A stretch of 62,963 nucleotides of DNA, the filler included, from Octopus bimaculoides (lineage: Eukaryota), in NCBI RefSeq assembly GCF_001194135.2. It is 9 parts of 8 records of this genome, joined end to end, with 100 filler letters (N's around TTAATTAATTAA, not from the genome) between each part and the next. Parts side by side here need not be neighbours in the genome. Positions count along the whole stretch, not along the records: positions 18,178 to 34,480 come from NC_068992.1; 8 more parts are not named here. One strand, given 5' to 3'. The position numbers were made by a program, and so were the translations under genes. Every line of letters begins with the position of its first letter. Positions within the stretch are counted from its first letter, which is position 1. Positions 18,178 through 34,480 of this stretch are shown here, one piece after another. The notes beneath the pieces are model-generated. The model made no database searches, was not told the origin of the DNA, and was given only the letters and a program-made list of their open reading frames with translations.

Positions 18178-18215
<38 letters not shown>

Positions 18216-18814
18216 CACAAACACACATATATACACACACATAGAGATGTGGACAAAACCAGTCCCAAAAACCAGTGAACCATGACACACTAGCTCACAG
18301 ACCAACCAAAAATAAAAAAAAAATCCTTTTTAACTCTTCTTTCCTCCTACCCCAGCTAGCCAGTCATACTGTCTCTTAAGACAGCAAAACATTCCCTTAA
18401 TATACACAAGAGAAAAACGCCAGGTCAGTTCCTCCTCAACTTTATTCGATTATCAAAGAATATGTATATGTATTTTTCCATATATGTATTTTCATACACT
18501 GTTTTTAACATTTTCATCTTATTATCAGAGAATGTGTGATAATCAGTATGCAACACTACAAAGTTCATACAAAGCTTTATACTTTAAATATATTTTATCA
18601 TCAAAGAATGTATATATGCATTTTAATACTCAAACTGTTTTTTAACATTTTTTATTATTCTCAAAGACTTTTGATAATCTTTTTCTAAAAAAGTGAAACC
18701 GGTTAAGTAAATAAATATTTTAAAAATAAGTGCATTTTCAAACCTTCTTTCATATATATTTCCACTCGTACGGTATTCTACAACTTTACTTTATTATATA
18801 TATATATCTGAAAA

Positions 18815-20310
18815 CTTTCTGTTCCAGTCTGTCGTCCCAGTCAACAAAAAGGGGAACAAGTCCTTTGCAGTGAAATACCTACCGATCTCGCTCACCTCTC
18901 ATATCATCAAAGTATCTGAGAGGGTTGTGACATCACAGATAATTCACTTCCTTGAAAGCAACAAATTGCTGAACCCCAACTAACATGGGTTCTGTAATAG
19001 AGGGAACTGCTTAACTCAGCTCCTGATTCACCTTGACATTTTAAGAGCTTTGGGAGAGGGTTAGAATACTGATGTCATCTACCTTGATTTCATCAAGGCC
19101 TTTGACAGGATGGATCATAAGATCCTCTTGAAAAAACAATCCAGCATTGGGGTCTCTGGAAAGTTACTACAATGGATCAAATGTTTCCTGACAGGCAGAA
19201 CCCAATACGTTGTAATTGAAGGAGTAAAATTAAGCCCAGCCAAAGTCAGAAGTGGTGTTCCACAAGGCACTGTGTTGGGCCCACTTCTTTTCATCATCTA
19301 CATCAATGACATTACTGACATCGTCAAGCACAACAATATAAGAATCTTTGCAGATGATTCCAAGACCTAAAAGGTCATCAATGAAGTGGGTGACTGGGCA
19401 TGCCTTCAGTCAGATCTTCTGGATGTCATCCAATGGGCGGAAAAGAATATATGCTGCTGAACGAGGACAAATCTGAGTTAATCCACTTCGGAGAAGTGGA
19501 TACTCTGAAACTCCCATACACCCTTCTTTCAGGTGAAACTCTCATGGCATCCGACAGCATCAAAGACTTGAGAGTAATTGTGGACAACAACATAAACTGG
19601 GCCGCTCATATAAACAACAAAGTTGACATGGCCCGCAGAATGTGTTCCGGGATTCTCAGAACTTTCCAGTTGAGAGATATCCACACCATTATCCTTCTCT
19701 TCCCTACTTTTGCCCGACCCCACCTTGAATACCGTTGTCCACTGCTCTCCATACACGAAACAAGGTATCATGGAAATTAAAGCACCTCAAAAGTCAATTA
19801 CAAAAAGGATAGATGGCATGAGATGCTTAGACTATTGGGGTCGACTAGAAAAGCTCAAGCTTTATTCCCTCCAACGCCGCTGTGAGCGCTACATCATCTG
19901 CATGATGTGGAAAATATTCCATCGGCATTGCTCAAATGATGTTGGCATCGCCTTTAAGATACACTCAAGACTTAAGACTCGTGTTATCCGCCCACAATAT
20001 AAATCATACTCGCATCACATAACAATACGGCGCAATTATTTCACTTCAATTGGCCCCGCTCTCTTTAACATTACACCAAAACACATTAAAGAAATCACCA
20101 TAAAGTTCAAGAAGTCTTTGGACAAATTCCTTCAAAAAATCCCGGATAAACCTCCTACACCCGGATATGTCTCCGTAAACAATAGCTCTCTCCTCTAGTG
20201 GGCCATGTTGTCCGATTCCTGATTTGGATGACTTCACCGGGGAGTGCTATTAAGTTAAACATGGCCTGGGCAAATACTAGCCGAAACCTATCAAAGTATC
20301 AAAGTAAAGC
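18815..20310 (+). mobile_element. CR1-group LINE, 5'-truncated and decayed, with 3' end
   Basis: YLDFIKAFDRMDH, SGVPQGTVLGPLLFIIYIND, IFADDSK, LEKLKLYSLQRR; ends in short TATCAAAG repeats. Confidence 0.92.
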
Positions 20311-21013
20311 ATATATNNNNNNNNNNNNNNNNNNNNNNNNNNNNNNNNNNNNNNNNNNNNNNNNNNNNNNNNNNNNNNNNNNNNNNNNNNNNNNNNNNNN
20401 NNNNNNNNNNNNNNNNNNNNNNNNNNNNNNNNNNNNNNNNNNNNNNNNNNNNNNNNNNNNNNNNNNNNNNNNNNNNNNNNNNNNNNNNNNNNNNNNNNNN
20501 NNNNNNNNNNNNNNNNNNNNNNNNNNNNNNNNNNNNNNNNNNNNNNNNNNNNNNNNNNNNNNNNNNNNNNNNNNNNNNNNNNNNNNNNNNNNNNNNNNNN
20601 NNNNNNNNNNNNNNNNNNNNNNNNNNNNNNNNNNNNNNNNNNNNNNNNNNNNNNNNNNNNNNNNNNNNNNNNNNNNNNNNNNNNNNNNNNNNNNNNNNNN
20701 NNNNNNNNNNNNNNNNNNNNNNNNNNNNNNNNNNNNNNNNNNNNNNNNNNNNNNNNNNNNNNNNNNNNNNNNNNNNNNNNNNNNNNNNNNNNNNNNNNNN
20801 NNNNNNNNNNNNNNNNNNNNNNNNNNNNNNNNNNNNNNNNNNNNNNNNNNNNNNNNNNNNNNNNNNNNNNNNNNNNNNNNNNNNNNNNNNNNNNNNNNNN
20901 NNNNNNNNNNNNNNNNNNNNNNNNNNNNNNNNNNNNNNNNNNNNNNNNNNNNNNNNNNNNNNNNNNNNNNNNNNNNNNNNNNNNNNNNNNNNNNNNNNNN
21001 NNNNNNNNNNNNN

Positions 21014-21088
<75 letters not shown>

Positions 21089-21477
21089 CAGAGAGAGCGG
21101 GCGAGAGAGTGGGAGAGTGAGAGAGACAAGAAGAGGGAGAAAGAGAGGCCATATCAAGAAAAATTAGTATATATTAGTATATTGTGATTGTTATATAGGC
21201 GCCACAGTGTAGGCGATGTATTCGTTTATTTAAATGTATATCTGAATATATTAGTAATATTGCCTCTCTCCCTACTCCTCTCTTTTCTTCCACTTCCTTC
21301 CTTCGTTCATTTATTTCTTTCTTTCTCTTTCAGTGATTCTTTTTAATGGTCTCCTGTTTTCAATCTTTCGAATATTTATCATGGTATAAAATGTAAATAT
21401 CAAGAGAAAAACTGTTCCCACACATGCTTACAGACGTGAATAGCTGAAGCTTCCTTATCCAACATAGGTACATGAAT

Positions 21478-21514
21478 GTTCGTATGTATGTATGCTGTAT
21501 GTATGTATGTATGT
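21478..21514. repeat. (TATG)n tract flanking retrotransposon 3' end
   Basis: Direct run with one interruption. Confidence 0.9.
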
Positions 21515-22595
21515 CATTATTCAGTTATTTTAAGATTTCTTGCCAATAGAGAAAGAGCCGGTTTCTAACCTAGATCCAAGGCTCCTTCATTGGAATTTCA
21601 GTATCAACTACAGGGTATTTTTGTTTGTATGTATGTATGTATGTATATGTGCAGATTTGTATGTTTTGCTTTATGTATGTATTCTCATGCATATAGTTGC
21701 ATATCTAGACATGCTCATATATATTTAAATGATAAACGCCAGGAAAGTTTTACAAATTTTTACAGTTCCAGTGATTGACTGGATCTGTAGTCTTTGAATT
21801 AGCGTTCTCCTTTCTGGTTTTGAGAAGCCTAATTTCTCAAAGTTGGTATTCAGACAGTGTGTTACACATCTTAGGGCCCCAATAATTACAGGTATAAACC
21901 TGAACTTGTACTCTGGATTGAGTAACTGCAGATTTCTCAATAGTTCAGCATAGGTGTTCTCTTTTTCATTGATCTTCAGCTTTATGTTAAAACATCCACT
22001 GGGCAGCTGATTTCCGCAACTGTACACAGTTTCTCTTCTCTATCCCAAATTATTATAACAGGTCTGTTGTGCTTACATTTTACTGAGGTCTTCACTGGGA
22101 CATTCCACCAGTTCTCCTTTTTTATTATGAGTGGCTATGGCTTCTACCATACTGAGGGTTCTTATTTCTTTGTCCTCGGGGTCATACTTCCGACGGATTT
22201 CGTTATAGAGTGTCCTAGCTAAAACATCATGTCTCCCTGGTAGATAATACTGTGATGACAATTTCGGACAATTGCTTATAATGTGGGTGATATCTTCGGT
22301 CTTAACTCCACAAAGTCTGCATTGGTTGTCACATTCTATTGTTTTTCCTGCATCTCTATCCCTTTCGTTTATCAGATGCTTGGTTGATATTTCCTGTTCC
22401 TGGATTGCAAACGCATACCCTTCAAAGTGGGAGGTAGTAATCCGGCTATTGGTTCATGACAGACTGTTTTGATGATCAATGTTACTATCATCTCGGAGCT
22501 TTCTACTAAGATATCCATGCATAGTCTTCTGCTCATATAGGCCCATCCTTTCATCTGATGGTACGTTGCGGTAGAGTCGTGCGACTTCTTTGGGC
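21515..22595 (-). mobile_element. R4/Dong-like non-LTR retrotransposon (restriction-like endonuclease), 5'-truncated copy 1
   Basis: Minus strand: zinc-knuckle region ..HIISNCPKLSSQYYLPGRHD, then KENTYAELLRNLQLL..RFIPVIIGALRCV; bounded by (TATG)n on both sides. Confidence 0.88.
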
Positions 22596-22639
22596 ATGTA
22601 TGTATGTATGTATGTATGTATGTATGTATGTATGTATGT

Positions 22640-23304
22640 CATTATTATGTTTTATTTCATGATTTCTTGCCAATAAAGAGCCGGTTTCTAACCTAGATCC
22701 AAGGCTCCTTCATTGGAATTTGAACATCAACAACAGGGTATTTTTGAATCTATGTAAGTGTACGTGAAAGTTTGTATGTTTTGTTGTATGTATGTCTTCT
22801 CATGCATATAGTTGCATATCTAGACATGCTTATATATACTTAAATGATAAAATTCTGGAAAGTTTTACTAATTTTTACAGTTCCAGTTATGAATTGGATC
22901 TATAGTCTTCGAATCAGGTTTTTTCTTTCTGGTTTTGTGAAGCCTAATTTCTCAAGATTGGTATTTAGGCAGTGTGTTACGTATCCCAGTGCTCCAATAC
23001 TTACAGGTATAAACCTCAACTTGTAATCTTGAAAGAGTAACTGCAGATTTCTCAATAGTTCAGAGTAGGTATTCTCTTTTCCACTGATCTTCAGCTTTAT
23101 GTTAGCATCCACGGGGCAGATGAGTTCCACAACTGTGCACAGCTTCTCTTCTCTATCCCAAATTATTATATCAGGTTTTTTGTGCTTACATTTTATTGCG
23201 GTTTCACAGGGACATTCCTTCAGCACTCCTTTTTATTATGAGTGGCTATGACTTTCACCATACTGTGGGTTCTTATTTCTTTGTCCTTGGGGTTAATCCT
23301 TTCG
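22640..23304 (-). mobile_element. R4/Dong-like non-LTR retrotransposon, 5'-truncated copy 2
   Basis: KHKKPDIIIWDREEKLCTVVELICP (PD-(D/E)xK-type endonuclease); 3' UTR homologous to copy 1; (TATG)n on both sides. Confidence 0.9.
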
Positions 23305-23311
23305 ATGTATG

Positions 23312-23340
<29 letters not shown>

Positions 23341-23343
<3 letters not shown>

Positions 23344-23670
23344 GCTGGACTCATGAGTCATCTTCGTAGTCATAAAGCAAGACCGATGGTTGACTACCAG
23401 GCCGCTGGTGATGATGCTACACACCATACTAGTCATGTCTGTCGGGCATGTGGAAGGGAGTGTGATTCAGCAGGAGGACTTAAACGACACGCAAAGGTAC
23501 ATGGAGCCCAATTACAACAACAGCCAGCTATTGCCAGTAAAGGTTTTGGATGCCAACTCTGTGCAAGACATTGTAGATCTTTGGCTGGGCTAAACAGTCA
23601 CATTCAATCACAGCACCGTTAAGTTAAGCTTCGTGCAATGGCCATACTCGATAACGAGGGGGCAGCCATC
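23341..23670 (+). mobile_element. Probable RTE LINE 3' end encoding tandem C2H2 zinc fingers
   Basis: AGLMSHLRSH (partial finger), CRACGRECDSAGGLKRHAKVH, CQLCARHCRSLAGLNSHIQSQH*; short 3' UTR with CTCG-ATAA-CGAG hairpin, then (ATGT)n; finger type resembles the RTE-BovB C-terminal C..C.R.C.S..GL.SH motif. Confidence 0.7.
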
Positions 23671-23734
23671 ATGTATGTATGTATGTATGTATGTATGTAT
23701 GTATGTATGTATGTATGTATGTACGTGCGTACAG

Positions 23735-23880
23735 GAATATGAGGTTAAGAAGCTTGTTTGCCACTACGTGGTTTCGAGATAGATATGTGATCTCACTGAA
23801 GAAAATATCTTCTAACATAAGCATTGGTTCGACCGAGGACTTGAGAAAGGAATTTTATTGGCGGAAACTGTGAAAGCTTC
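23735..23880 (+). mobile_element. SINE family C, old degenerate head
   Basis: TAAGAAGCTTG...TCTTCTAACATAAGC...GGCGGAAACTG. Confidence 0.55.
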
Positions 23881-24028
23881 ATTTGTGGTTACCACTCATG
23901 CAAGCATTTGAACAAGATGTCCAGTTCGTGGATACCCCGACCGTCCTTTCCGCCAATCTCGGAAGATCTGAAAAGGGACATGAATGCTGCTTTTCCTTCC
24001 CTGACTAAGCAAATAACATTATACAAGT

Positions 24029-24067
<39 letters not shown>

Positions 24068-24489
24068 TGTAGACCCTGATATACGATCATTTGTGTATTC
24101 ATAATGCCGTAATGATATCAATATCAAATTAAGGTGTGAATTCTTCACAGTCAGGTATGGTTTCCTGCATCTTGCCAACTTCGATCGTTATTTAACTATG
24201 ATATGTTATTAGTTCACTTTTCCAAAATAAATGTGACAAATTTCGGCTACTTTTATGAACTTGACAATCAAAATGGCGTCTTACAGAAACAATAAGTAGC
24301 ATCTTGCAACTGTAGCTAACTGAGACAAATGATGATAAAATAGAACAGAAAGATCTTATTATGTTATAAAATTTTCGAGAATACAGAAAATGGAAGAATT
24401 ATAAGGGACAAAATGAGAAATTATCCCTAATTTCATCTTGAATCTTTTCAAATATGAACAAGTAATTCGATGGAAAGAACAATAGTTTT

Positions 24490-24660
24490 CTTATAAAGCT
24501 GTTATATAAAATCAATAGACGTGGATTATGTTGAAAGTAATGCAAAAGTGAGCACAACTCTTCTGCTTAAGTAACACAGGTCGTTAAACTTACGTTGATA
24601 GAGTAACTTTTTCTTTGTATAGAAATACTACTTACTAGTTTCTCGCGTTAATTCGCAGCA
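24490..24660 (+). mobile_element. Possible mariner 3' end fragment
   Basis: GATTATGTTGAAAGTAA resembles the DYVEK* terminus of mariner transposases. Confidence 0.35.
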
Positions 24661-24676
24661 CTTTCTTTTTCGGTCT

Positions 24677-24724
24677 CTGAGGCTGAAGAGAAGATAACCG
24701 TTCCGAAACGCACGCGTCCTACAG
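24677..24724 (+). ncRNA. Type I hammerhead ribozyme-like motif with canonical core
   Basis: CTGAAGA (24683-89), imperfect stem II, GAAA (24705-08), stem III ACGC/GCGT, GTC cleavage triplet (24716-18), stem I CTGAGG/CTACAG (5 of 6 pairs). Confidence 0.6.
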
Positions 24725-24869
24725 TCTGGGTAGGTGAGGCTGTGAGCTGACTCAGTGTATCTACACCCATTTGCCTATAGCGATAAATTGTCTCCATGAC
24801 AAAATACAGTGAATGGCTTTCTTATGTGTTCGAGTATGTCTCAAGCATACTCGAGCTGGTAACAAGTTG

Positions 24870-26045
24870 GTACTTAGCATTGTCTTCATCACAAGCGATG
24901 CATTTTCGCTACTGTCCAAATTAACTCCCGAATCGTTTAGAAAATATTCAGGTGTGAATTGTTTTAGCTACTCCTTCAGAGCCACTTGCACCTTGTCTCT
25001 GTTATAAAACCATTGTCTACCCAATTGTCCTTCCAAATCTGGACTGTACAGTGGATGGGAGGAACATTGAGCAGCCTAATTTTGGATGGGGTCCAGTTTT
25101 CCAATTGTCAGGTTTGTTGTCAAAGATGTGTTGGTGATGCATCCTAACGCTGAATGTAGATCATTTTCAGGCTTTTGACTTGCTTCTTCCTCCGTCTAGT
25201 CTTCCGAAACTTGATCAGTGTCTCAGTGTACCACGAGATATTCACAGTACTACCACATTCCAGAAGGTCAACGGAAATGATAGCATTACCACACACCATG
25301 ACCTTCGTACAGAATGTTGTGCCAAATCTGACCCTTCTTAGATTTGAAAATAATAATACCATAAATGTGATGCCATTCTATCATTGGAACTTCATTTTCA
25401 GATCATGAAGATACGATCCCCTGACAATATATCAGAAAAAACGTGACTTTCTTAATTTCGAATGCTTCCAGCAGATCAGAGCGAACTTCCAGCCTTTCTC
25501 TTTCAAGTTGGTGTCAACTAGCGAGGTACCCACTCTGCACACACTTCCACACTTTTCCATACCCCAAACCCTCCACCATCTTCTGTAAAGCATTGTGAAC
25601 ACAGTCCAATTGTGCATCAAACTCTCAGACTTAAATATGACTCGTCTGTCTGCACGAATCAAATTGTCCATTCCCTGGCTTTTCATGTCAATGGTCGCAG
25701 CTGATGCTCTCCAATCGCATCGTTTATCTTCTATGCTGGTTTTCTATTTTCTTAAGCAACTTGATGCACATCTGTTCAATGCATGTTTAAGTGGTTTCAT
25801 CACTGTAAACAACCCGTAGCCTTCTGTGGGTGTCAGATAGTCCACACACTTTCTTTGTCACAAATTCAATGACAGAAAGATACTTCAGTTTAGAACCAAT
25901 TATTTTCATACAACGAAGAACATGAAGAAGAGTTTCTGTCGCCGAAAAATTACTCTACGAAAATGGGCAATTTGTACGACTCACGCTACTTGAAAGAATG
26001 AGTTATGTCCACTTTTGCATTACTTTTTGGTACACACGCCTCTAC
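24870..26045 (-). mobile_element. Mariner transposase remnant
   Basis: NLIRADRRV, KVMVCG..IISVDLLECGSTVN, HPLYSPDL, KCIACDEDNAK in shifting frames; TIR-like AAAAAGTAATGCAAAAGTG near 26010-26030. Confidence 0.82.
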
Positions 26046-26254
26046 TTATTTCTAGTCTTCTTGAAATAGCAGGTGGAATGTGGATTTGTTTTTCATTTCT
26101 CCTTCCCCTTCTTTTCTTTTACCTTTTGTACCTTCCATTTTTCTATTAGTCTATCTAAATTTATATTTCTAAACAGAAAGAAAAGCACACACACGGATAC
26201 GTACATACATAATTCATGTATATGATATATGTATGTATGTATATATATATATAT

Positions 26255-26430
26255 GTACACATGGGGGAGAATGTACGAAAAAAAACAACGACACACGAGG
26301 ACAGGTGGTGTAAACAACAAAAGGATGTATTAGTATGACGCTCGGGAATACGGAAAGTCTTTAACGTTTCGAGCTACGCTCTTCAACAGAAAGAATACGG
26401 AGAAAACAAGGAGAAAAACACGGAGAAAAA
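26255..26430 (-). mobile_element. Penelope-like terminal repeat (family H) with hammerhead-like fold
   Basis: Minus strand TCTTT CTGTTGA A GAGC-GTA-GCTC GAAA CGTT AAAGA; homologous to 31505-31650. Confidence 0.55.
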
Positions 26431-26687
26431 AAAATTGAATGGTGTTTGGTCAACGACATACGCACACACACACACACATACACACAATTATAGGTATGTA
26501 TATATATATACGCACATCAAACACATACACTCACAAAACACATACATATATGTATATACATGCATACATATTTTTCCTTCTACATATCTGTGTGTTTGTG
26601 TGTATGTTAATATATCTGCTTGAGTGTGCGTGCTTGAGTGTGAACGAAGTTATATACTCGTTTCGGTATGTGTTTAGATATTGCTGT

Positions 26688-26730
26688 ATACATACATACA
26701 TACATACATACACACATACGTATGTATGTA

Positions 26731-26818
<88 letters not shown>

Positions 26819-26820
26819 AC
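26688..26820. repeat. (CATA)n/(TCTG)n/(TCTA)n compound tetranucleotide array
   Basis: Direct runs. Confidence 0.95.
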
Positions 26821-27049
26821 TATATCTATATATACACGTACAAGGATATATAGTTATTGATACGTACTTATCTATATCAATGCATGTATGTATATAAGTA
26901 TATATATATATATACACACAAAGGAAATGAGCATGTTTTTAGAGCTGTTTGTGATGAAAAACATTTGATCGAAACAATTGCCCAAAGTAAGTTTTATGTA
27001 AGTTAATTTAATGTCAGAGAAATATTGTAGATTCTTATAAGTTTGTTTT

Positions 27050-27872
27050 GTGAAGAAATAGACAGAGAAAAATCCCAGCAATGGCTGAGAAGCTCAGGAC
27101 TCAAAGCAGAGACTGAAGGATTTTTAATTGCTGCACAAGACCAGAGCCTCCCCACCAGAAATTACCAAAAACACATAATGAAAAGAAATATAACAAGTAA
27201 CTGTAGAATATGTGGAGATGGACAAGAAACAATAAATCATATTATCTCTGGCTGCCCAGTCCTGGCTAAGAAGGAATATATTCACAGACACGACAGAGCT
27301 GGGACCTATATACACTGGAAGCTATGCCAACACTATGAAATAACAACAGAAAAAGATGGTATAAACACNNNNNNNNNNNNNNNNNNNNNNNNNNNNNNNN
27401 NNNNNNNNNNNNNNNNNNNNNNNNNNNNNNNNNNNNNNNNNNNNNNNNNNNNNNNNNNNNNNNNNNNNNNNNNNNNNNNNNNNNNNNNNNNNNNNNNNNN
27501 NNNNNNNNNNNNNNNNNNNNNNNNNNNNNNNNNNNNNNNNNNNNNNNNNNNNNNNNNNNNNNNNNNNNNNNNNNNNNNNNNNNNNNNNNNNNNNNNNNNN
27601 NNNNNNNNNNNNNNNNNNNNNNNNNNNNNNNNNNNNNNNNNNNNNNNNNNNNNNNNNNNNNNNNAGACAAATACATAACAAAAACACCAGGACTTACAAA
27701 TATATATAACATACAGAAAAATGCACTACTGGGTACTGCACACATTCTACGCAAAACACTTTCAATACAGTAAACATAAGAGCACCACAGCAAACCACAG
27801 CACATACCCAAGGCGCACAGAGCTGCGCTCGGTAGTGAAGTGAAAGCACGTTATAAAAATAAAACTACTGAA
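27050..27872 (+). mobile_element. Dong/R4-like retrotransposon 3' part ending in (TAA)n
   Basis: LKAETEGFLIAAQDQSLPTRNY, CRICG..ETINHIISGCP.LA..EY.HRHD zinc knuckle, IQKNALLGTAHILRKTLSIQ* (stop 27771-73), about 100-bp 3' UTR, then (AAT)n. Confidence 0.93.
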
Positions 27873-27926
27873 CAATAATAATAATAATAACAATAATAAT
27901 AATAATAATAACAATAATAATAATAG

Positions 27927-28138
27927 TTTCAAATTTTGCTACGAGGGCAGCAGTTTTCGGGGATGGAATGAGTCGATTATATCGACACCAGTATTCAGCT
28001 GGTACTTATTTTATTGACCCTGAAAGGGCGAAAGGCAAAGTCGACCTCGGCGGAATTTGAACTCAGAACGGAGCGACGAGCGAAATACCGCTGAGCATTT
28101 CGTCCAGCGTGCTAACAATTCAGCCAGTTCACCGCGTT
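27927..28138 (-). mobile_element. SINE family A, tail variant 2
   Basis: Head and core as family A; 3' end GCCCTCGTAGCAAAATTTGAAA. Confidence 0.9.
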
Positions 28139-28156
28139 AACAACAACAACAACAAC

Positions 28157-28695
28157 AATGCCTTGATGCAATACCAAGCGCTGGCTCTCATGGCTTCTGA
28201 TCTTAACTGATTGAAAATGTTATCATGTCCATGTTTTGTCTTGATATAAATGATAGGCTGCAGCAAATATTTTGCTCAATGCCACAGATTTGCTTGTCAG
28301 TTGACCTTATCCAGTTGAGCATGTCCCTTAGTGGATGATCATATGTGCATCTCTGATCACGAGCAGAAGTAGTAGAGGAGCTTTGCAACCATGTGTTGAG
28401 AGGAAGTCTTTGGTGTATGAATAATTCACCTCTAGAAACATGGGTGTTTCGTTCAACGTCATTAAACAACGTTTATTCAGGGACCTTTTGAGCAGGATGG
28501 GCTACTCAATCTGAAGAAAATTCTAACTGGGCCCCACCTGCAAGGTCATGCGGTGTTTATCTTGATATGAGATTACCATGTCACGCACATATGGTTGTGA
28601 TGCATGTGCCAGACGAGTAGTCATGATGGGTATATTGGACTGCGTATATTTTACCCCAGTGTTACTTTGATGGCATGCACTGCTTCTCTCTCTAG
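28157..28695. mobile_element. Non-coding probable interspersed element between trinucleotide repeats
   Basis: About 540 bp of complex sequence bounded by (AAC)n and (GAT)n/(AAT)n; no long ORF; repeat status inferred, single copy in window. Confidence 0.4.
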
Positions 28696-28716
28696 ATGAT
28701 GATGATGATGATGATG

Positions 28717-28764
<48 letters not shown>

Positions 28765-28799
28765 GTAATGTAAAGAGGGAGAGAGAGTGATTGATGATG

Positions 28800-30540
28800 T
28801 GTACATTGAGAATTTGAATGAAAACGAAGAAGCGGAAGAAACAAAAACTGATTCTCAAAAGATTATTGAGAACCTGGATTCAATAAAACTCCAATAAATC
28901 TTTGGAATATAGAAAAAAAGTCGTGTAGCAAGTGAAACAGCAAATGTAAGCCATGTAATGAAGTATATAAAAATTAATGGTATCACCGACTTTAGAAAGT
29001 TAATTACCGCTGCAGGTTTTCTGGTTGGTGAACGATTAAGTATCAAACAAACAGAAAGGAAGAAATGGAAGGAACCCTGGTGGAAGAGAAGATTCGAAGG
29101 TGACATAACTCAGCTCAGAAAATATCTAGATAAAATGGATGCATGGCATAGAGGAAAATTGGAAAAGCCAAATTAGGGGAGAAACGATGCATGGAAACGT
29201 GACATTAAATAAAGTTGCGAGATTTGAGTGGAGGGATTGAAGAAGTGAAACGGCGAATCAAGGCAAAATTAAATCGGATTAGGAGCTTTACAAGTAGACA
29301 ACCNNNNNNNNNNAAACACACAAATAGAACAGACTGTTCTCTACGAACCAGATGTTCTTTAGAAGATTGTTAAGGGAAAAAATGCAAATGCTATGCTGAA
29401 AGCTGAAGAATCCGCACAATTTTGGTCAAATATATGGGGCGATTGCAAAAGGTCAATATGGGGCGATTGCAAAAGGATGAAGAAATGAAGTTGAGGATAA
29501 GTTATCTAATGTACTAAAACAGAGATGAGAAATAGTTTCATAGGAAGACGTCTCAGTACATGTTAGAAAAATGCTGAACTGGAAAACTCCTGAACCGAAT
29601 GGTTTCTGGTTGAAAAGATTTAAAAGTGTTCATTCAAGACTAGGGAGGCACCTAAATGATTGTGTAGTACAGGGGAAAGTTCCAAGTCTGATGGTTGAAT
29701 GGAAGATAACTTTGATAAAATGAAGGATCCCTTAGTTGGAAAGTACAGGGCGATTGCGAGCTCGAATTTGTTATGGAAGATGTTGACAGGCATCTTTGCT
29801 GCAAAAGTGTATGATCACTTGCTTCAGAATGAGATACTACCTATCAAGCAGAAAGGATATAGAAAAATCTTTTTGGGAACCAAGGGCCATTTTGTTAAGG
29901 ACAAGGCAATCATGAATGATTGCAAAAGACGGCAAAAGAATCTCTGCATGATTTGGATAGACTTGAAGAAAGCCCTTGAAATGGTTTCACATACGTGGGT
30001 ACAGAAATGCTTTAAAATTATGGAGTAGAAGATTGTATTATTAAAGAAATCGAGTCTAGCATGCTTCTGTGGAAGACAAACTTGTGTGCAAGAAACACAC
30101 ATCTAGGAGTGGTCAACATGAGAAGAAAAATATTCGGAGATTGTCACCATTGCCGTTTGTGATCACCATTATCGATGATTTTACGGTAGACAGTTATTGG
30201 CTATCAAACTGAAAACAGATCAATCATCCTCAGATCAATCATTTACTTTCCATGGATGATTTGGCAAGAATGAATCACAGTTTAATTCACTGATCAGAAC
30301 TGTTCATTAGTGCCGTAATGACATTGGGACGGAGTTTGGTACTGCAAAGTGTGTCACACTGACCATGAAGAGAGGTAGGCGTGTATATAGTAGAGGATTT
30401 GAATTGCCTGATGGAGAGTCAATTGGTGAACTCCGAGGGTTGTAGGTATAAATATCTGGGCATTTTGGAGATGGAAAAAGTTCTGAAGAAGGAAGGAAAT
30501 GTGAAGTAAATCTATGTAAATAGGTTAAGACAGTGAGGAT
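28800..30540 (+). mobile_element. Old Dong/R4-like retrotransposon, N-terminal and RT region
   Basis: EPWWKRRFEGDITQLRK, AEESAQFWSNIWG, LLWKMLTGI, QKGYRK, IWIDLKKALEMVSHTWV; many stops and frameshifts. Confidence 0.85.
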
Positions 30541-31256
30541 GTTTATAGACACATTTTACACAGAGTACCGTATATCTTTGTAGCAATTCTCTCGTCACTA
30601 CTACAGTAAGTACCGTGAAGCCTATGTTTCAATGATGAAGAGATTTAATAACAGTGAAACATTTTCAGATTTCTCTACCCTATGAGTAGAAAACGGTTAA
30701 AATAATTTTAGTCATTTCAGAAATGTCTTTACTTCACTAAATTGATATTTCTAATTAGATTTCTGGTGTTTATCATATCAAATATGTTAACACTGATCCA
30801 ACTATTAATAAAATCAATGTGAGCTCTCTATTTCACCCGTCCAACTGATAAGGTGGATAAGAATTTAGTTTATGTGTTTTGATGAAATATTTAATTTAGA
30901 TTTATATATGCCAAGTTGTTTTAAAGGTAGTTACTGATATTTTATATATAAACAAACTTACGGAACTGACGCACACGTACATATATACGTGTACAGATAC
31001 ATGACTTGCAAACATAACTGTATTACGAGTTCAGCAATGTTTCGTCAAGTTTCTCTAGTTTACAGATATCTTAATTTCATCGTGTTATTCTATATATACA
31101 TACGTAAACACACACACACACACACACATACACACACACACACATACAAACACACACAAGTACGCACGCACAAACACATACGCACATACATACATACATA
31201 CGCACATACATACATACATACATACATACATACATACATACGTACACACATACATA

Positions 31257-31350
31257 GCTTTTACTTGTTTCAGTCATTAGACTGCGGTCATACTGGGATA
31301 CAACCTTGAAGAATATTTAATCGAATGAATAGACCCCATTACTTATTTCT
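31257..31350 (-). mobile_element. SINE family C, 3' tail fragment
   Basis: TTTTACTTGTTTCAGTCATTAGACTGCGG. Confidence 0.75.
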
Positions 31351-31504
31351 TTTAAAACTCTTTCACTCCGAGATGAAAGCGCTAATAAAGTATTCTCCGA
31401 AATTCCGACTACCACCTTTTTCTTAATGTGTATATATNNNNNNNNNNNNNNNNNNNNNNNNNNNNNNNNNNNNNNNNNNNNNNNNTATATATATATATAT
31501 ATAT

Positions 31505-31650
31505 GTTTATTTCGTAATGTTCCTTTCTGTTCAAGAGCGTAGGCTCGAAACGTAAAAGACTTTCTCACCTTCTCTAGTGTTAAATTAATATACTGTTTGT
31601 TGTTTATACACCTGTCTTCGTCTTTTGTTTTTCTGTAAATTTCAACTATA
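31505..31650 (+). mobile_element. Penelope-like terminal repeat (family H), second copy
   Basis: CTTT CTGTTCA A GAGC-GTAG-GCTC GAAA CGTA AAAG; downstream TTGTTGTTTA.AC..CCTGTC.TCGT matches the 26.3 kb copy. Confidence 0.55.
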
Positions 31651-32719
31651 TATTCATATTTATATTAAGAAACAACACGTTGTAATCAGGAAACTATATT
31701 TCACGTTGACAACACACTTTAACGATACAGTAAAGACATCAGAACGTTGTAGCACAGAGATCCGTTCTTCACCTGCTTTGATTTTAACTTATACCTTTAG
31801 AATTTAAGGACCGAAACACTTGCCTCAGAGGAGTGGTTTCTTCTCTGAAGACCTGCTCTTCAGCTCTCTTGAGAGTTTCTTACCACTCTAATCCGGATTT
31901 TCATTAATCCGAATGATGTCGCACGAAGATCTGTCGTTTATCTATTTCTATTTTAAGCTTTAATACAAACTCTTCGCAAATGCACAACACATATACGCAG
32001 CCTAGGTACGTAGATAACATGACTATCAAATATATTCATCATTATTCAGACGTACCAACTGAAACTTTAATCATTTAACTCTTCAACAAACTTAAATTAA
32101 TCCCCTGCCAAACACACCGTCTCCTGTTTTACTCGTAATAATCAACAATATCTAATATAACAAAATATAAAGAAAAATAAAATATATGAATCCGGCATTA
32201 GTTTCAACGATGAATATTAGTTTATTGGTTTCAACAGATCAGTTTACGAATATGAAATTTCCTTTCCATTCGTAACGTAAATTGCTCTACTATCCGTGGT
32301 TAGAACATAGTTCTAGCTAGAAATGCAAAACTTTAAGTTAAATCTAGTCGTAGTCACTCTGCCACTTCAATGTCGATATGAAGAGTGAATTTCCACCGGG
32401 GAAAAGATAACAACAAAAACAATGAACATTCCAACTATTCAGCCAAGTAAACCAACATTCATTGAATTAACCTGTGAATATTCCGCAGGCACTTGTGTCC
32501 TTTGGAAATCTACGCTGAAATAAATTGACATGGAGTATGCCAAGCAGCTCTTTGGAAAAACAAGTTAAGTCCATCCGAAGGCTCTGCGAGACTTAATTTC
32601 TATCACAAATCTTGAACCCTTGTACATGGTCAATAAACTTGCCCCAAATTCCATTGGGACTTCATGATTACAGAACAAAATTCATAATCAGTCAATAAAC
32701 AAAACCTTTCGAGCGATCC

Positions 32720-32930
32720 AATGAAGGGACGTCTATGCGGTCGCGTTATCTGTCAGAAATAAGAGTCCAATACCCCTCACACTAAACTTTGCAATCTTAA
32801 AAGTAAGCATATACATAGGATAATATTTTAAAAACTCCCCTCAAAAAATTGGATGGTCATAGCTGGAATGCTTCTGATTTTGGATTTGCTTCATCAATGT
32901 TGACCTAGAGCTAAGGATCAACTACTACTA
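32720..32930 (-). mobile_element. Family D repeat, degenerate
   Basis: Weak similarity to the GAGATTTGGC.GCTATTTCTA.CAGGTC motif seen at 55505 and 62770. Confidence 0.35.
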
Positions 32931-33119
32931 CGACGACGACAACGACCTTAAAACCATTCCCTGTATTCACTGTCGTCTTCCAGACCAAACTACTTCAGAA
33001 ACTCCACAATGATTTCTAATTATCCACTACACTGTATGACCATTCCAATAAGTACTTCATAAACAATTGCAGAAGCCACTTCATAAAACACTTCAGCGAT
33101 CTATTTATTAACTTTTCAA

Positions 33120-33800
33120 AAGTCCTTCACAACTAACTCAAAGGTGACTGACAAGGCCAGTACAGCACAAGCATGCTCGATTGCAGCAGCTGCAACAGAA
33201 ATTCTGTTTTGGGTGCGGTATTCTGTCACACGTTCTTCTCAATTTGTTCTTGTTACCTAGGATATTTCAGTGCAAGGTCTTAAAAGAAGAAACAGACTGG
33301 TGAATAATGTGTCCCCAGCCTCACAGATGGAGATTATATTAGATCATAGGTTCTCAAAGTGGGCGCTATCGCTCCCCGGTGGGCGTTGAGAGGGTCCAGG
33401 TGGGCACTGGTGTCTAAGGGGGTGATGCAGGTGGAGGGGGCCATAGAGAAGAAGGAGGCATTGGGAGGAAAGCAGTGGATTGGGTGACGCTATGAATTTA
33501 TAATATTATATTATTGTATACAAATTATATAATATTGTATTAAATATCAAATCATTCATATTATATATAAATTAGTAAAATGTAAAATATTTATTTATAC
33601 ATAAAAATAGGGGTGGGGACACTGAGGGTATTATGTGGCCATGTATGTGTATGTGTTTGAGAACCTCTGTATTAGATGATTGGTGGCGGCCAGTGTAACA
33701 AGCAACAGGGTATTTCTTCAGAGTCTTCTTGAACCTTTTTGTTGGTGTCCTGTCACAATGGGCAATAGAGATCACCAAAGGGCAGAACCTGTTATGGCAT
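33120..33800 (-). mobile_element. RTE-BovB-like LINE 3' remnant, split by a hAT MITE
   Basis: KRFKKTLKKYPVAC and terminal FCCSCCNRACLCCTGLVSHL finger-like motif. Confidence 0.65.
33345..33669. mobile_element. hAT (Charlie-like) MITE
   Basis: TIRs CATAGGTTCTCAAA / TTTGAGAACCTCTG; perfect 8-bp TSD TATTAGAT at 33337-33344 and 33670-33677. Confidence 0.92.
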
Positions 33801-34299
33801 TAACGAATAGACATATATGATAGAAAAAATATCCACCAACAAATTAATCAACCACTAACCATTCAGAACAATTGTCAGAAATCTGATTGATGAATCATAA
33901 CTCATGTAACCACCAGTGAACCATTAATCACCCCATTGGAGCAATCCCCTCACCTTGTTTTTAGCCAACGAGACTAATAACCCATTAACCCGGTTGTCGG
34001 CTTACAAAATCCCTCAACAGTTAGACATACAAATGTCCATCAACACGACTAACACTCTAGTCTATCTATTAACTAAATAGAAAATCAGTTTACAAAAAAA
34101 TCCCCACACTCACCTTCCACAACCACGCCACATATCATACACACATCAACAGTATTGATCCATTCAACAGCGAAGCTATTACAGAACAGGCAAGCGAATA
34201 CATTTTCATTAGTACAAGTGTTTTATAAATATCATTCACTTAACTAATACATATGTAGTTTGACGCGTGCTTTGTATATTATAGTATGGGTGTATATGT

Positions 34300-34443
34300 G
34301 TGTCTGTGTTTGTATTTGCGAGCTTGTATGTGCTGGTTTGTTTATGGCCTCGTAACTTAAAAGTTCGACAAAAGTATCCGACAGAATAAGTACCAGGTTT
34401 AAAGAAATAAATACGTACTACAATGCGTGAAACAGTAAAAGGT

Positions 34444-34445
<2 letters not shown>
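34300..34445 (+). mobile_element. SINE family C, degenerate 3' half
   Basis: GTAACTT...CGACAGAATAAGTACCAGG...GAAACAGTAAAAG. Confidence 0.6.

Positions 34446-34480
<35 letters not shown>

What the first reader, a model, noticed from the sequence alone, without database searches (positions are those of the whole stretch)
21478..23724. A (TATG)n array colonised three times: candidate tetranucleotide-targeting retrotransposon system
Seen: (TATG)n - copy 1 (-) - (TATG)n - copy 2 (-) - (TATG)n - zinc-finger element (+) - (TATG)n. Both minus-strand copies have the same 3' junction in the same repeat phase (TATGT|CATTATT), differ in 5' truncation point and sequence, and encode a PD-(D/E)xK endonuclease. 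Known: R4/Dong-clade elements are sequence-specific and some target microsatellites such as (TAA)n. Inference: this lineage targets (TACA)n/(TGTA)n, a specificity I do not recall being characterised, and accumulates in arrays.
Basis: partly seen in the sequence, partly recalled or inferred. Interest (0 to 1): 0.8.

Follow-up and report, generated by a model that had tools for sequence, protein, structure and literature searches.

The report
Dong-like LINE copies inside (ACAT)n microsatellite
Two dead copies of a Dong/R4-type jumping gene (the kind with a restriction-enzyme-like nuclease), plus one unrelated zinc-finger retro-fragment, sit inside a single (ACAT)n microsatellite of what is probably an octopus genome, and relatives elsewhere show this lineage aims at (ACAT)n the way classical Dong aims at (TAA)n.

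Summary
Window 21482-23723 reads (ACAT)n, copy 1, (ACAT)n, copy 2, (ACAT)n, ZnF fragment, (ACAT)n.

- **The two minus-strand copies.** They are 5'-truncated pseudogenes, 85% identical to each other. They belong to a non-LTR retrotransposon with RT, a CCHC motif and an R2-like restriction-like endonuclease (RLE), and no APE domain.
- **Not a local duplication.** Copy 1 is closer to an Octopus vulgaris copy than to copy 2.
- **The "same phase" 3' junction does not discriminate.** A tail would give the same junction.
- **The 5' junctions do discriminate.** All four usable ones abut same-strand (ACAT)n-type arrays (window copies 1 and 2, O. vulgaris L003, locus L005).
- **Lineage-wide association.** Five further 3' ends, from four related families in unidentified eukaryotes (39-48% aa identity), also end in (ACAT)n.
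- **Sister families behave like Dong.** In Plodia and in locus L012 they are flanked on both sides by (TAA)n, in identical tandem arrays.
- **Internal control.** A (TAA)n-type copy lies in the same window at 27043-27925.
- **Shared RNA feature.** The (ACAT)n lineage has a covarying 3'UTR hairpin.

Verdict: a microsatellite-targeting Dong/R4-type LINE with a different target. This is a small step from known biology. The ZnF fragment remains unclassified.

The parts
21482..21514 (-). Imperfect (ACAT)n array of about 8 units. It is the 3' flank or tail of copy 1.
   Evidence: period 4, 8.5 copies, 86% matches; sequence.
21515..22595 (-). Copy 1: a 1081-bp, 5'-truncated, dead copy of a Dong/R4-type RLE LINE. 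The 3'UTR is 21515-21724 and ORF remnants are 21725-22594. The CCHC motif is at 22268-22321 and RP(V)IIIWD at 22042-22068. Defects are an in-frame stop at 22454-22456 and two frameshifts.
   Evidence: Homologues. Structure.
21555..21584 (-). Conserved 3'UTR hairpin of copy 1: GAGCC-TT-stem-loop-stem-C-GGCTC.
   Evidence: 88.9% of cells paired and 8 of 10 pairs with compensatory changes across 9 sequences.
21622..21646 (-). Internal (ACAT)6-like run inside the 3'UTR of copy 1. A degenerate version is present in copy 2 and L003.
22596..22639 (-). (ACAT)11, perfect. It is the 5' flank of copy 1 and at the same time the 3' flank or tail of copy 2.
22640..23304 (-). Copy 2: a 665-bp, more deeply 5'-truncated, dead copy of the same family. 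KKPDIIIWD is at 23155-23181. There is a premature stop at 22900-22902 and a frameshift near 23220. The hairpin is at 22678-22707.
23305..23341 (-). (ACAT)9, perfect. It lies between the 5' end of copy 2 and the 5' end of the ZnF fragment, so it cannot be the tail of either and must be a remnant of a pre-existing array.
   Evidence: inference from the orientation of the two elements.
23342..23670 (+). ZnF fragment: a 329-bp, 5'-truncated 3' end of an unclassified retroelement or retrocopy. It holds half a finger plus two C2H2-like fingers, a stop at 23620-23622 and a 48-nt 3'UTR.
   Evidence: weak zf-C2H2 hits only; no homologue; 3'UTR fold not significant, z = 0.40.
23671..23723 (-). (ACAT)13, perfect, reading (ATGT)13 on the + strand. 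It is the 3' flank or tail of the ZnF fragment and the right-hand end of the array.

Best explanation
A single (ACAT)n.(ATGT)n microsatellite was hit at least three times by target-primed reverse transcription.

What is shown:
- Two hits are independent, 5'-truncated, now dead copies of one family of non-LTR retrotransposon with Dong/R4-type architecture. That architecture is a divergent Myb-like N-terminus, RT, a CCHC motif and an R2-like restriction-like endonuclease, with no APE domain.
- The sense strand of these copies always runs with the ACAT strand.
- The anatomy, the protein fold, the independence of the copies, the both-flank arrays and the lineage-wide (ACAT)n association are all shown.

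What is inferred, by analogy with R2 and Dong:
- The ORF protein binds its own RNA through a conserved 3'UTR hairpin that lies 30-60 nt before the RNA's terminal (ACAU)n.
- It recognises (ACAT)n duplex DNA, and the RLE nicks the ATGT strand.
- The freed 3'-OH pairs with the (ACAU)n end of the RNA and primes cDNA synthesis. This would give a seamless, always in-phase 3' junction with a variable number of repeat units.
- Reverse transcription usually aborts, giving 5' truncation. Second-strand joining happens inside the array, so the rest of the array remains as the 5' flank.
- Each new copy brings more target sequence, so arrays accumulate head-to-tail copies.

DNA recognition, the nick position and tail-primed initiation were not tested. 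The third insert, the ZnF fragment in opposite orientation, is an unrelated retro-fragment that used, or was tolerated in, the same array.
For: **Protein.**
- Relatives of about 1085-1350 aa have RVT_1 and no Exo_endo_phos domain.
- The best solved-structure hits by sequence are R2 proteins.
- The model of the window's C-terminal region matches the R2 C-terminal region.
- CCHC, R/K-P-D, D/E and E-K are conserved in 41-43 of about 43 family members.

**Independence.** The three-way site pattern is 18/40/24.

**5' flanks abutting same-strand arrays.**
- Copy 1: (ACAT)11. Copy 2: (ACAT)9.
- O. vulgaris L003: (CCAT)20(ACAT)2.5, with almost no array at its 3' end.
- L005: (CATA)50 at the 5' end, against (ACAT)3 at the 3' end.
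- Background density of such runs is low.
- The (ACAT)9 at 23305-23341 lies between two 5' ends, so no tail can explain it.

**3' ends of related families.**
- L004: (ACAT)31.
- L002: (CATA)59.
- L010: (CATA)9.8.
- L011: two copies, A and B, each followed by (ACAT)n. A further 147-bp unclassified segment, C, lies between the last two arrays.

**Sister families.**
- Plodia L008 and L009, and L012, are flanked on both sides by (TAA)n. L008 also carries tandem 5'-truncated copies separated by (TAA)n.
- A neighbour-joining tree puts all (ACAT)n families on one side of a split from the (TAA)n families.
- The N-terminal 440 aa of an (ACAT)n family is colinear with a (TAA)n family, E = 1e-20.
- A (TAA)n-type copy ending in (AAT)17 sits in the same window.

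**Hairpin.** Covariation score 0.761 against 0.269 for shuffles (0 of 500 shuffles reach it), and at most 0.164 for slid registers.

**Literature.** R4/Dong elements insert into rDNA or microsatellites and lack N-terminal zinc fingers (PMC7998251). Most RLE LINEs are target-specific (PMC4640811).
Against: - Only four informative 5' junctions were available. One of them (copy 1) is also the 3' array of copy 2, so it is not independent.
- The near full-length L004 copy has no (ACAT)n within 1.5 kb upstream of its ORF, although its true 5' end is undefined.
- L001 and L006/L007 are internal fragments with no arrays.
- No pre-insertion (empty) allele was examined.
- No genome-wide census was possible, because octopus assemblies could not be searched by DNA.
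- Clade assignment lacks reference Dong, R4, Rex6 and HERO sequences.
- The neighbour-joining tree has no bootstrap and no outgroup.
- The hairpin segments were chosen by eye.
Confidence: 0.75

Rival explanations
1. Tail only. The family inserts more or less at random and merely carries an (ACAT)n 3' tail, like many CR1/L2/I-type LINEs. The arrays between copies are just tails, and the clustering reflects microhomology of incoming RNA tails with existing tails.
For: - Every intact 3' end is followed by (ACAT)n, and the junction phase is constant. A tail predicts exactly this.
- Copy 1's 5' array is indeed the 3' array of copy 2.
- L004 shows an array at the 3' end only.
Against: - L003 and L005 have long arrays at the 5' truncation point that are not preceded by any copy, and only 0.5-3 units at the 3' end.
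- 23305-23341 lies between two 5' ends.
- Sister families are flanked on both sides by (TAA)n at full length.
- Preferential insertion into an existing tail is itself sequence targeting.
Confidence: 0.13
2. Passive accumulation. (ACAT)n arrays are neutral or fragile 'safe havens' where insertions of any retroelement persist or are favoured, with no sequence recognition by this family.
For: - An unrelated ZnF fragment in the opposite orientation occupies the same array.
- The piece is crowded with other TE remnants and microsatellites.
Against: - Orientation is strictly fixed relative to the repeat strand in all nine ACAT-type copies examined.
- The same association holds in five families from several hosts.
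- In the same window, the (TAA)n-type sister element ends in (AAT)17, not in (ACAT)n.
- Other (ACAT)n arrays in the piece (26688-26719, 31092-31256) hold no copy of the family.
Confidence: 0.08
3. Local tandem or segmental duplication of one copy plus its array, followed by deletion, produced copies 1 and 2.
For: The two copies are adjacent, in the same orientation and separated by the same repeat.
Against: - In the three-way comparison, copy 1 shares 40 derived sites with the O. vulgaris copy L003 against copy 2. Copies 1 and 2 share only 18 against L003.
- Truncation points differ, and 3'UTR indels are shared between copy 1 and L003 but not copy 2.
- Pairwise identity of 85% is no higher than to copies in other genomes.
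Confidence: 0.02

Closest known systems
Dong (R4 clade non-LTR retrotransposon of Bombyx mori and many insects, molluscs and cnidarians; (TAA)n-specific)
   Same: - Same domain order: single ORF with a Myb-like N-terminus without zinc fingers, then RT, CCHC and RLE.
- No APE domain.
- Integrates into a microsatellite with arrays on both flanks, in fixed orientation.
- Forms head-to-tail arrays of 5'-truncated copies separated by the repeat, seen here in Plodia L008 and in the window.
- Full-length homology to (TAA)n-flanked relatives.
   Different: - The associated repeat is the tetranucleotide (ACAT)n, not (TAA)n.
- The (ACAT)n families form a separate branch, with 21-31% aa identity to the (TAA)n families in the C-terminal 287 aa against 39-48% within the branch.
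- Both types coexist in this window.
R2 (28S rDNA-specific RLE LINE; solved structures 8GH6, 8IBW, 9DOU, 9NL2/3)
   Same: - RT, CCHC and RLE fold. R2 gives the best structural and sequence matches among solved structures.
- Presumably the same TPRT chemistry and recognition of the element's own 3'UTR RNA.
   Different: - No N-terminal C2H2 fingers in full-length relatives.
- The target is a microsatellite rather than a unique rDNA site.
- Sequence identity to R2 is only 13-17% in the aligned C-terminal region.
Waldo (R1 clade; (ACAY)n-specific, in Anopheles and earwig)
   Same: Same class of target, an ACAY-type tetranucleotide microsatellite (PMC3812793).
   Different: Waldo is an APE-type, two-ORF R1-clade element. 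The family here has an RLE and no APE domain. Any shared target is therefore convergent.
Togen ((TG)n, fish) and microsatellite-specific HERO families (leech)
   Same: RLE-type LINEs whose targets are microsatellites (PMC4640811).
   Different: - Different repeats.
- Their phylogenetic relation to this family could not be tested, because no reference sequences were available.
- HERO membership cannot be excluded by my data.

Membership tests
R4/Dong clade (RLE-type non-LTR retrotransposons) | RT followed by a CCHC motif and a C-terminal restriction-like (PD-(D/E)xK) endonuclease | tested here: met
   - The window copies carry CCHC plus R/K-P-D...D/E...E-K.
- Full-length relatives have RVT_1 upstream.
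- The AlphaFold model matches the R2 C-terminal region, Foldseek E = 2e-8.
R4/Dong clade (RLE-type non-LTR retrotransposons) | No APE (Exo_endo_phos) endonuclease domain | tested here: met
   Pfam finds only RVT_1 and zf-RVT in eight relatives of 649-1492 aa, five of them 935 aa or longer, and in L004 and L011. The window copies are too truncated to test directly.
R4/Dong clade (RLE-type non-LTR retrotransposons) | N-terminus without C2H2 fingers but with a divergent Myb/SANT-like motif (PMC7998251) | tested here: inconclusive
   - There are no C2H2 fingers in the N-termini of the L004 ORF, P0015, P0090, P0118, P0162 or P0180.
- A shared W..E...Y....GY..R...W.....T...L..Q motif is seen by eye. 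It aligns between L004 and the (TAA)n-type P0162, E = 1e-20 over 427 columns.
- No profile test against Myb/SANT was run.
R4/Dong clade (RLE-type non-LTR retrotransposons) | RT-domain phylogeny groups with reference R4, Dong and Rex6 rather than HERO, NeSL, R2 or CRE | not testable with these tools
   - No reference (Repbase) sequences were available.
- The only proxy is that the nearest characterisable relatives are (TAA)n-flanked elements in a moth and in L012.
- Dong-R4 is reported as abundant in octopus genomes (PMC8967140, PMC13282606).
R4/Dong clade (RLE-type non-LTR retrotransposons) | Site-specific integration into rDNA or a microsatellite, with the target on both flanks | tested here: met
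   Four of four informative 5' junctions, and all 3' junctions except L003, abut same-strand (ACAT)n-type arrays. The sample is small.
Dong sensu stricto | The target is (TAA)n | tested here: not met
   The flanks are (ACAT)n. In contrast, the sister copy at 27043-27925 of the same window, Plodia L008/L009 and L012 have (TAA)n.
Waldo (R1 clade, (ACAY)n-specific) | APE endonuclease and R1-clade two-ORF structure | tested here: not met
   No APE domain, and an RLE fold instead.
Randomly inserting LINEs with a microsatellite 3' tail (CR1/L2 type) | The repeat occurs only at the 3' end, and 5' flanks are unrelated sequence | tested here: not met
   5' flanks carry the repeat in copies 1 and 2, L003 and L005. 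L004 is compatible with tail-only, but its 5' end is undefined.

The most novel reading that the evidence does not exclude
An old sublineage of Dong/R4-type RLE retrotransposons switched its target from (TAA)n to the tetranucleotide (ACAT)n. Supporting observations:
- It is present in octopus and in at least three other unidentified eukaryote assemblies.
- It shares a conserved CCTT/TTGTT-loop 3'UTR hairpin.
- It coexists in the same octopus genome with the (TAA)n-type sister lineage.

This would provide a natural matched pair for working out how RLE LINEs read a simple repeat, and for re-aiming R2-style insertion tools. The same arrays may also be used by a second, unrelated zinc-finger-encoding element in the opposite orientation.
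Probability: 0.45. Interest if true: 0.6.

Novelty: new variant of a known kind. Interest (0 to 1): 0.45.

Why it matters
Microsatellite-targeting RLE LINEs are known: Dong at (TAA)n, Togen at (TG)n, and some HERO families. The principle is therefore not new. What is added:

- An (ACAT)n-associated branch that sits next to the (TAA)n-specific Dong-like families. Both branches have colinear proteins and occur in one genome.
- A covarying 3'UTR hairpin shared across the (ACAT)n branch.

Because the proteins are colinear, the determinants of repeat recognition can be mapped by comparison and domain swaps. This is relevant now that R2-type proteins are being developed for site-specific transgene insertion.

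The result also explains part of the (ACAT)n/(TATG)n microsatellite landscape of octopus genomes. Arrays are split, extended and multiplied by these insertions. Genome annotators should expect "Dong-R4" fragments embedded in such arrays.

Tried and rejected
1. **Exact-protein look-ups.** The window ORF 22900-23226 and P0019 returned nothing.
2. **O. bimaculoides locus L001 and Logan contigs L006/L007.** They hold only internal fragments with both ends missing, so they say nothing about junctions.
3. **Metagenome DNA scans.** Two scans with conserved 3'-end words found nothing.
4. **ZnF fragment.**
   - It has no homologue in the protein index and only sub-threshold generic C2H2 Pfam hits.
   - It has no related sequence in any fetched locus.
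   - Its 3'UTR fold is not better than shuffles, z = 0.40.
   - I considered that it might be an inverted 5' segment of copy 2 made by twin priming. I rejected this because it ends in a stop codon plus 3'UTR, because an (ACAT)9 separates it from copy 2, and because full-length relatives have no C2H2 fingers.
5. **Rfam.** No family matched in the window piece or in eight loci, so no HDV-like ribozyme was detected at 5' ends.
6. **Literature.** Searches for (ACAT)n or rotations of it together with non-LTR elements returned nothing relevant. Kojima & Fujiwara 2004, Xiong & Eickbush 1993 and Biedler 2015 are not held. Repbase Reports are also outside the searchable library, so prior description there cannot be excluded.
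7. **Supplements of PMC4640811.** They contain no protein alignment usable as a clade reference.
8. **Hairpin in other families.** It is not evident in the Plodia elements or in the window's (TAA)n-type copy. It is therefore not a universal Dong feature.
Full report
**1. What is in the sequence.**

Only 18178-34480 of the window is real DNA. It is a draft scaffold with N gaps at 20317-21013, 27369-27664, 29304-29313 and 31438-31485. It is extremely rich in microsatellites.

The region of the finding reads, on the + strand:

| Coordinates | Feature |
|---|---|
| 21482-21514 | (GTAT)n, imperfect |
| 21515-22595 | copy 1 (-) |
| 22596-22639 | (ATGT)11 |
| 22640-23304 | copy 2 (-) |
| 23305-23341 | (ATGT)9 |
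| 23342-23670 | zinc-finger ORF fragment (+) |
| 23671-23723 | (ATGT)13 |

- On their own strand, both copies end ...AATAATG(ACAT)n.
- They are 85% identical over the shared roughly 665 bp, with several indels, and are truncated at different 5' positions.

**2. What the minus-strand copies encode.**

Stitching copy 1 across one in-frame stop and two frameshifts gives 287 aa. It contains:
- C-R-x-C-x4-E-x3-H-x4-C;
- then R-H-D;
- then N-R-P-(V)-I-I-I-W-D ... E-I-S-C-P-x-D-x-N ... E-K ... Y..L.

In an alignment of 47 relatives, the conservation is as follows:
- the CCHC residues are conserved in 42-43 of 43 members;
- the P is conserved in 43 of 44;
- the following D is conserved in 42 of 44, and copy 1 has V there, an inactivating change;
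- the acidic residue 15 positions after that D is D or E in 42 of 43;
- the E-K pair is conserved in 41-42 of 43.

Homologues:
- A full HMMER scan found 1324 homologues.
- The long ones (935-1492 aa) have a central RVT_1 domain, no APE domain and this region at the C-terminus.
- Their best matches among solved structures are R2 retrotransposon proteins.

Structure:
- An AlphaFold model of the window protein (pLDDT 88.9, pTM 0.85) matches the C-terminal parts of four R2 structures best, with E = 2e-8 to 3e-4 and TM 0.57-0.66.
- Bunyavirus cap-snatching PD-(D/E)xK endonucleases come next.
- "Encodes a restriction-like endonuclease" is therefore supported.

The copies are pseudogenes. Copy 2 keeps KPD...E but has a frameshift and a premature stop.

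The closest named proteins are from Octopus bimaculoides (67-72% identity) and O. vulgaris (84%). The host is therefore probably an octopod. The species was not determined.

**3. Independent insertions, not a duplication.**

I aligned copy 1, copy 2 and the O. vulgaris copy (L003, chromosome OX597824.1). The sites split as follows:
- 18 sites where copy 1 = copy 2, differing from L003;
- 40 sites where copy 1 = L003, differing from copy 2;
- 24 sites where copy 2 = L003, differing from copy 1.

Copy 1 also shares 3'UTR indels with L003 that copy 2 lacks. A local duplication would make the first class the largest. It is the smallest.

**4. Tail or target?**

The identical 3' junction and phase cannot decide the question. 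An element whose RNA ends in (ACAU)n gives that result whatever it inserts into. The 5' junctions can decide it.

| Copy | 5' flank | 3' flank |
|---|---|---|
| Window copy 1 | (ACAT)11 (also copy 2's 3' array) | (ACAT)8, imperfect |
| Window copy 2 | (ACAT)9 | (ACAT)11 |
| O. vulgaris L003 | (CCAT)20(ACAT)2.5 | AATAATGAC\|TGACATATAT, essentially no array |
| L005 (46% aa identity, unidentified eukaryote in an ENA assembly) | (CATA)50 | (ACAT)3 |

- In L003 and L005, no other copy lies upstream of the array.
- Inside the window, the (ACAT)9 at 23305-23341 lies between the 5' end of copy 2 and the 5' end of the oppositely oriented ZnF fragment. It cannot be anyone's tail, so a pre-existing array is required.
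- Outside element-associated arrays, perfect (ACAT) runs of 2.5 units or more are short (10-13 bp). They occur about 5-6 times per 14-20 kb of octopus DNA. Exact abutment at three independent 5' junctions is therefore far beyond chance.

Counter-examples and gaps:
- The near full-length L004 copy has (ACAT)31 at its 3' end but no array within 1.5 kb upstream of its ORF. Its 5' end could not be defined.
- L001, L006 and L007 are internal fragments.

**5. The association is a property of a lineage.**

Five further 3' ends from four related families all terminate in (ACAT)n:
- L004: (ACAT)31.
- L002: (CATA)59.
- L010: (CATA)9.8.
- L011: two same-orientation copies, A and B, each followed by an (ACAT)n array. 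A short unclassified 147-bp segment, C, sits between the last two arrays.

More distant homologues behave exactly like classical Dong:
- Two copies of a 5055-bp element in Plodia interpunctella are flanked on both sides by (TAA)n. One of them is followed by two tandem 5'-truncated copies separated by (TAA)n.
- A full-length element in L012 lies between (TAA)25 and (ATA)24.

Further comparisons:
- A neighbour-joining tree of the C-terminal 311 columns places all six (ACAT)n-labelled sequences on one side of a split and both (TAA)n-labelled ones on the other. It has no bootstrap and no outgroup.
- The N-terminal 440 aa of the L004 element aligns colinearly with the (TAA)n-type P0162 (E = 1e-20). 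The alignment includes a W..E...Y....GY..R...W...T...L..Q motif and no C2H2 fingers. This fits the published description of R4/Dong N-termini (PMC7998251).
- The same window contains two fragments of a (TAA)n-type Dong-like element, at 27043-27872 (+) and 28898-30530 (+). The first ends in (AAT)17 at 27874-27925. Both target types therefore coexist in this genome, which argues against a generic "any repeat will do" explanation.

**6. A conserved RNA element.**

A hairpin lies 30-60 nt upstream of the terminal repeat in the octopus family, the L002, L004/5, L010 and L011 families, and L012. Its form is xGCC-TT-[6 bp]-(T/G)NGTT loop-[6 bp]-C-GGCx.

| Measure (9 sequences) | Value |
|---|---|
| Pair cells that are standard pairs | 88.9% |
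| Pairs with compensatory double changes | 8 of 10 |
| Covariation score | 0.761 |
| Shuffled score | 0.269 (0 of 500 shuffles reach the observed value) |
| Slid registers | at most 0.164 |

- In the window it lies at 21555-21584 (copy 1) and 22678-22707 (copy 2), on the minus strand.
- I picked the segments by eye, which inflates the statistic somewhat.
- The hairpin is not evident in the Plodia element or in the window's (TAA)n-type copy.
- It is the obvious candidate for the RNA feature recognised by the element's protein. That role is inference.

**7. Mechanism (inference, by analogy with R2 and Dong).**
- The protein binds its own 3'UTR and recognises (ACAT)n DNA.
- The RLE nicks the ATGT strand.
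- The exposed 3'-OH pairs with the terminal (ACAU)n of the RNA and primes cDNA synthesis.
- Synthesis usually aborts, giving 5' truncation. The upstream remainder of the array becomes the 5' flank.

This accounts for:
- the seamless in-phase 3' junctions with 0.5 to 59 repeat units;
- the fixed orientation in all nine ACAT-type copies examined;
- the head-to-tail arrays.

**8. The zinc-finger fragment.**
- 23342-23670 (+) starts inside a finger (...KAGLMSHLRSH).
- It has two more C..C...GL..H...H fingers, a stop codon and 48 nt before (ATGT)13.
- It looks like a 5'-truncated 3' end of another retroelement or a retrocopy, with the repeat on its own strand being (ATGT)n.
- I could not classify it. 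Whether it represents a second array-using family is open.

**9. Comparison with what is known, and verdict.**

The literature establishes the following:
- Most RLE LINEs are target-specific, including for microsatellites (PMC4640811).
- Dong targets (TAA)n in most insects, molluscs and cnidarians (PMC7998251, PMC3812793).
- (ACAY)n is targeted by the unrelated APE-type Waldo elements (PMC3812793).
- Dong-R4 elements are abundant, and recently active, in octopus genomes (PMC8967140, PMC13282606).

I found no paper describing (ACAT)n association for an RLE/Dong-type element. Repbase Reports and several key paywalled papers could not be searched.

It is a modest extension of a well-known kind: a Dong/R4-type lineage with a different microsatellite target. 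Membership in R4/Dong rather than HERO remains to be confirmed by a reference RT phylogeny.

Noticed in passing
window 27043-27925: A 5'-truncated copy of a second, (TAA)n-type Dong-like LINE on the + strand. It is 49% aa identical to P0162 across the CCHC region and is split by the N gap 27369-27664. It ends ...ACTACTGAAC followed by (AAT)17 at 27874-27925. Its 5' flank shows no clear (TAA)n.
   Followed up: partly
window 28898-30530: A frameshifted N-terminal plus RT fragment of a (TAA)n-type Dong-like element on the + strand, matching P0162 aa 192-749. It is a separate insertion from the one at 27043.
   Followed up: partly
window 27927-28158: A SINE-like sequence of about 215 bp (...GGCGGAATTTGAACTCAGAAC...) with an (AAC)6.7 tail. 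It directly abuts the (AAT)17 array of the (TAA)n-type Dong-like copy.
   Followed up: no
window 18873-20198: RT and C-terminal remnants of another LINE on the + strand, with no zinc fingers. Its C-terminus ...FKKSLDKFLQKIP... resembles CR1/L2-type elements, from memory. It is cut by the N gap 20317-21013, and (AG)n follows at 21014-21147.
   Followed up: no
window 31092-31420: A 165-bp (ATAC)n/(ACAC)n array directly abuts a SINE-like sequence (agcttttacttgtttcagtcattagactgcgg...). This array, and the one at 26688-26719 next to (TATC)26, hold no copy of the Dong-like family.
   Followed up: no
L008 3849-3900; L009 3849-3900; L012 789-900: Full-length (TAA)n-type elements begin immediately after the (TAA)n array with GC-rich, apparently structured sequence (CCCCCCTAAGGGGCCACC..., TTAGGGCACTGGGGTAGG...). 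This may be a 5' processing ribozyme, but no Rfam family matched.
   Followed up: partly
L002 2998-3327 and 4136-5532; L004 11168-11254: The L002 element has 22 copies of a 15-bp tandem repeat inside its 3'UTR. It lies next to (TTAGGG)n and 144-bp subtelomere-like satellites. L004 also has a degenerate (GGTTAG)n nearby. Some copies may therefore sit near chromosome ends.
   Followed up: no
L004 8491-8560 versus L005 7072-7140: The sequences just downstream of the (ACAT)n arrays of two 97.5%-identical copies share a diverged motif (TTATTTGAT[T/A]ACGCAGGT ... AGATGTGGACC). Either both arrays belong to an older repeat family or the element's 3' end extends beyond the array in this family.
   Followed up: no
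P0161 (1357 aa): One distant relative of the protein family carries an OTU-like cysteine protease domain (PF02338) in addition to RT.
   Followed up: no
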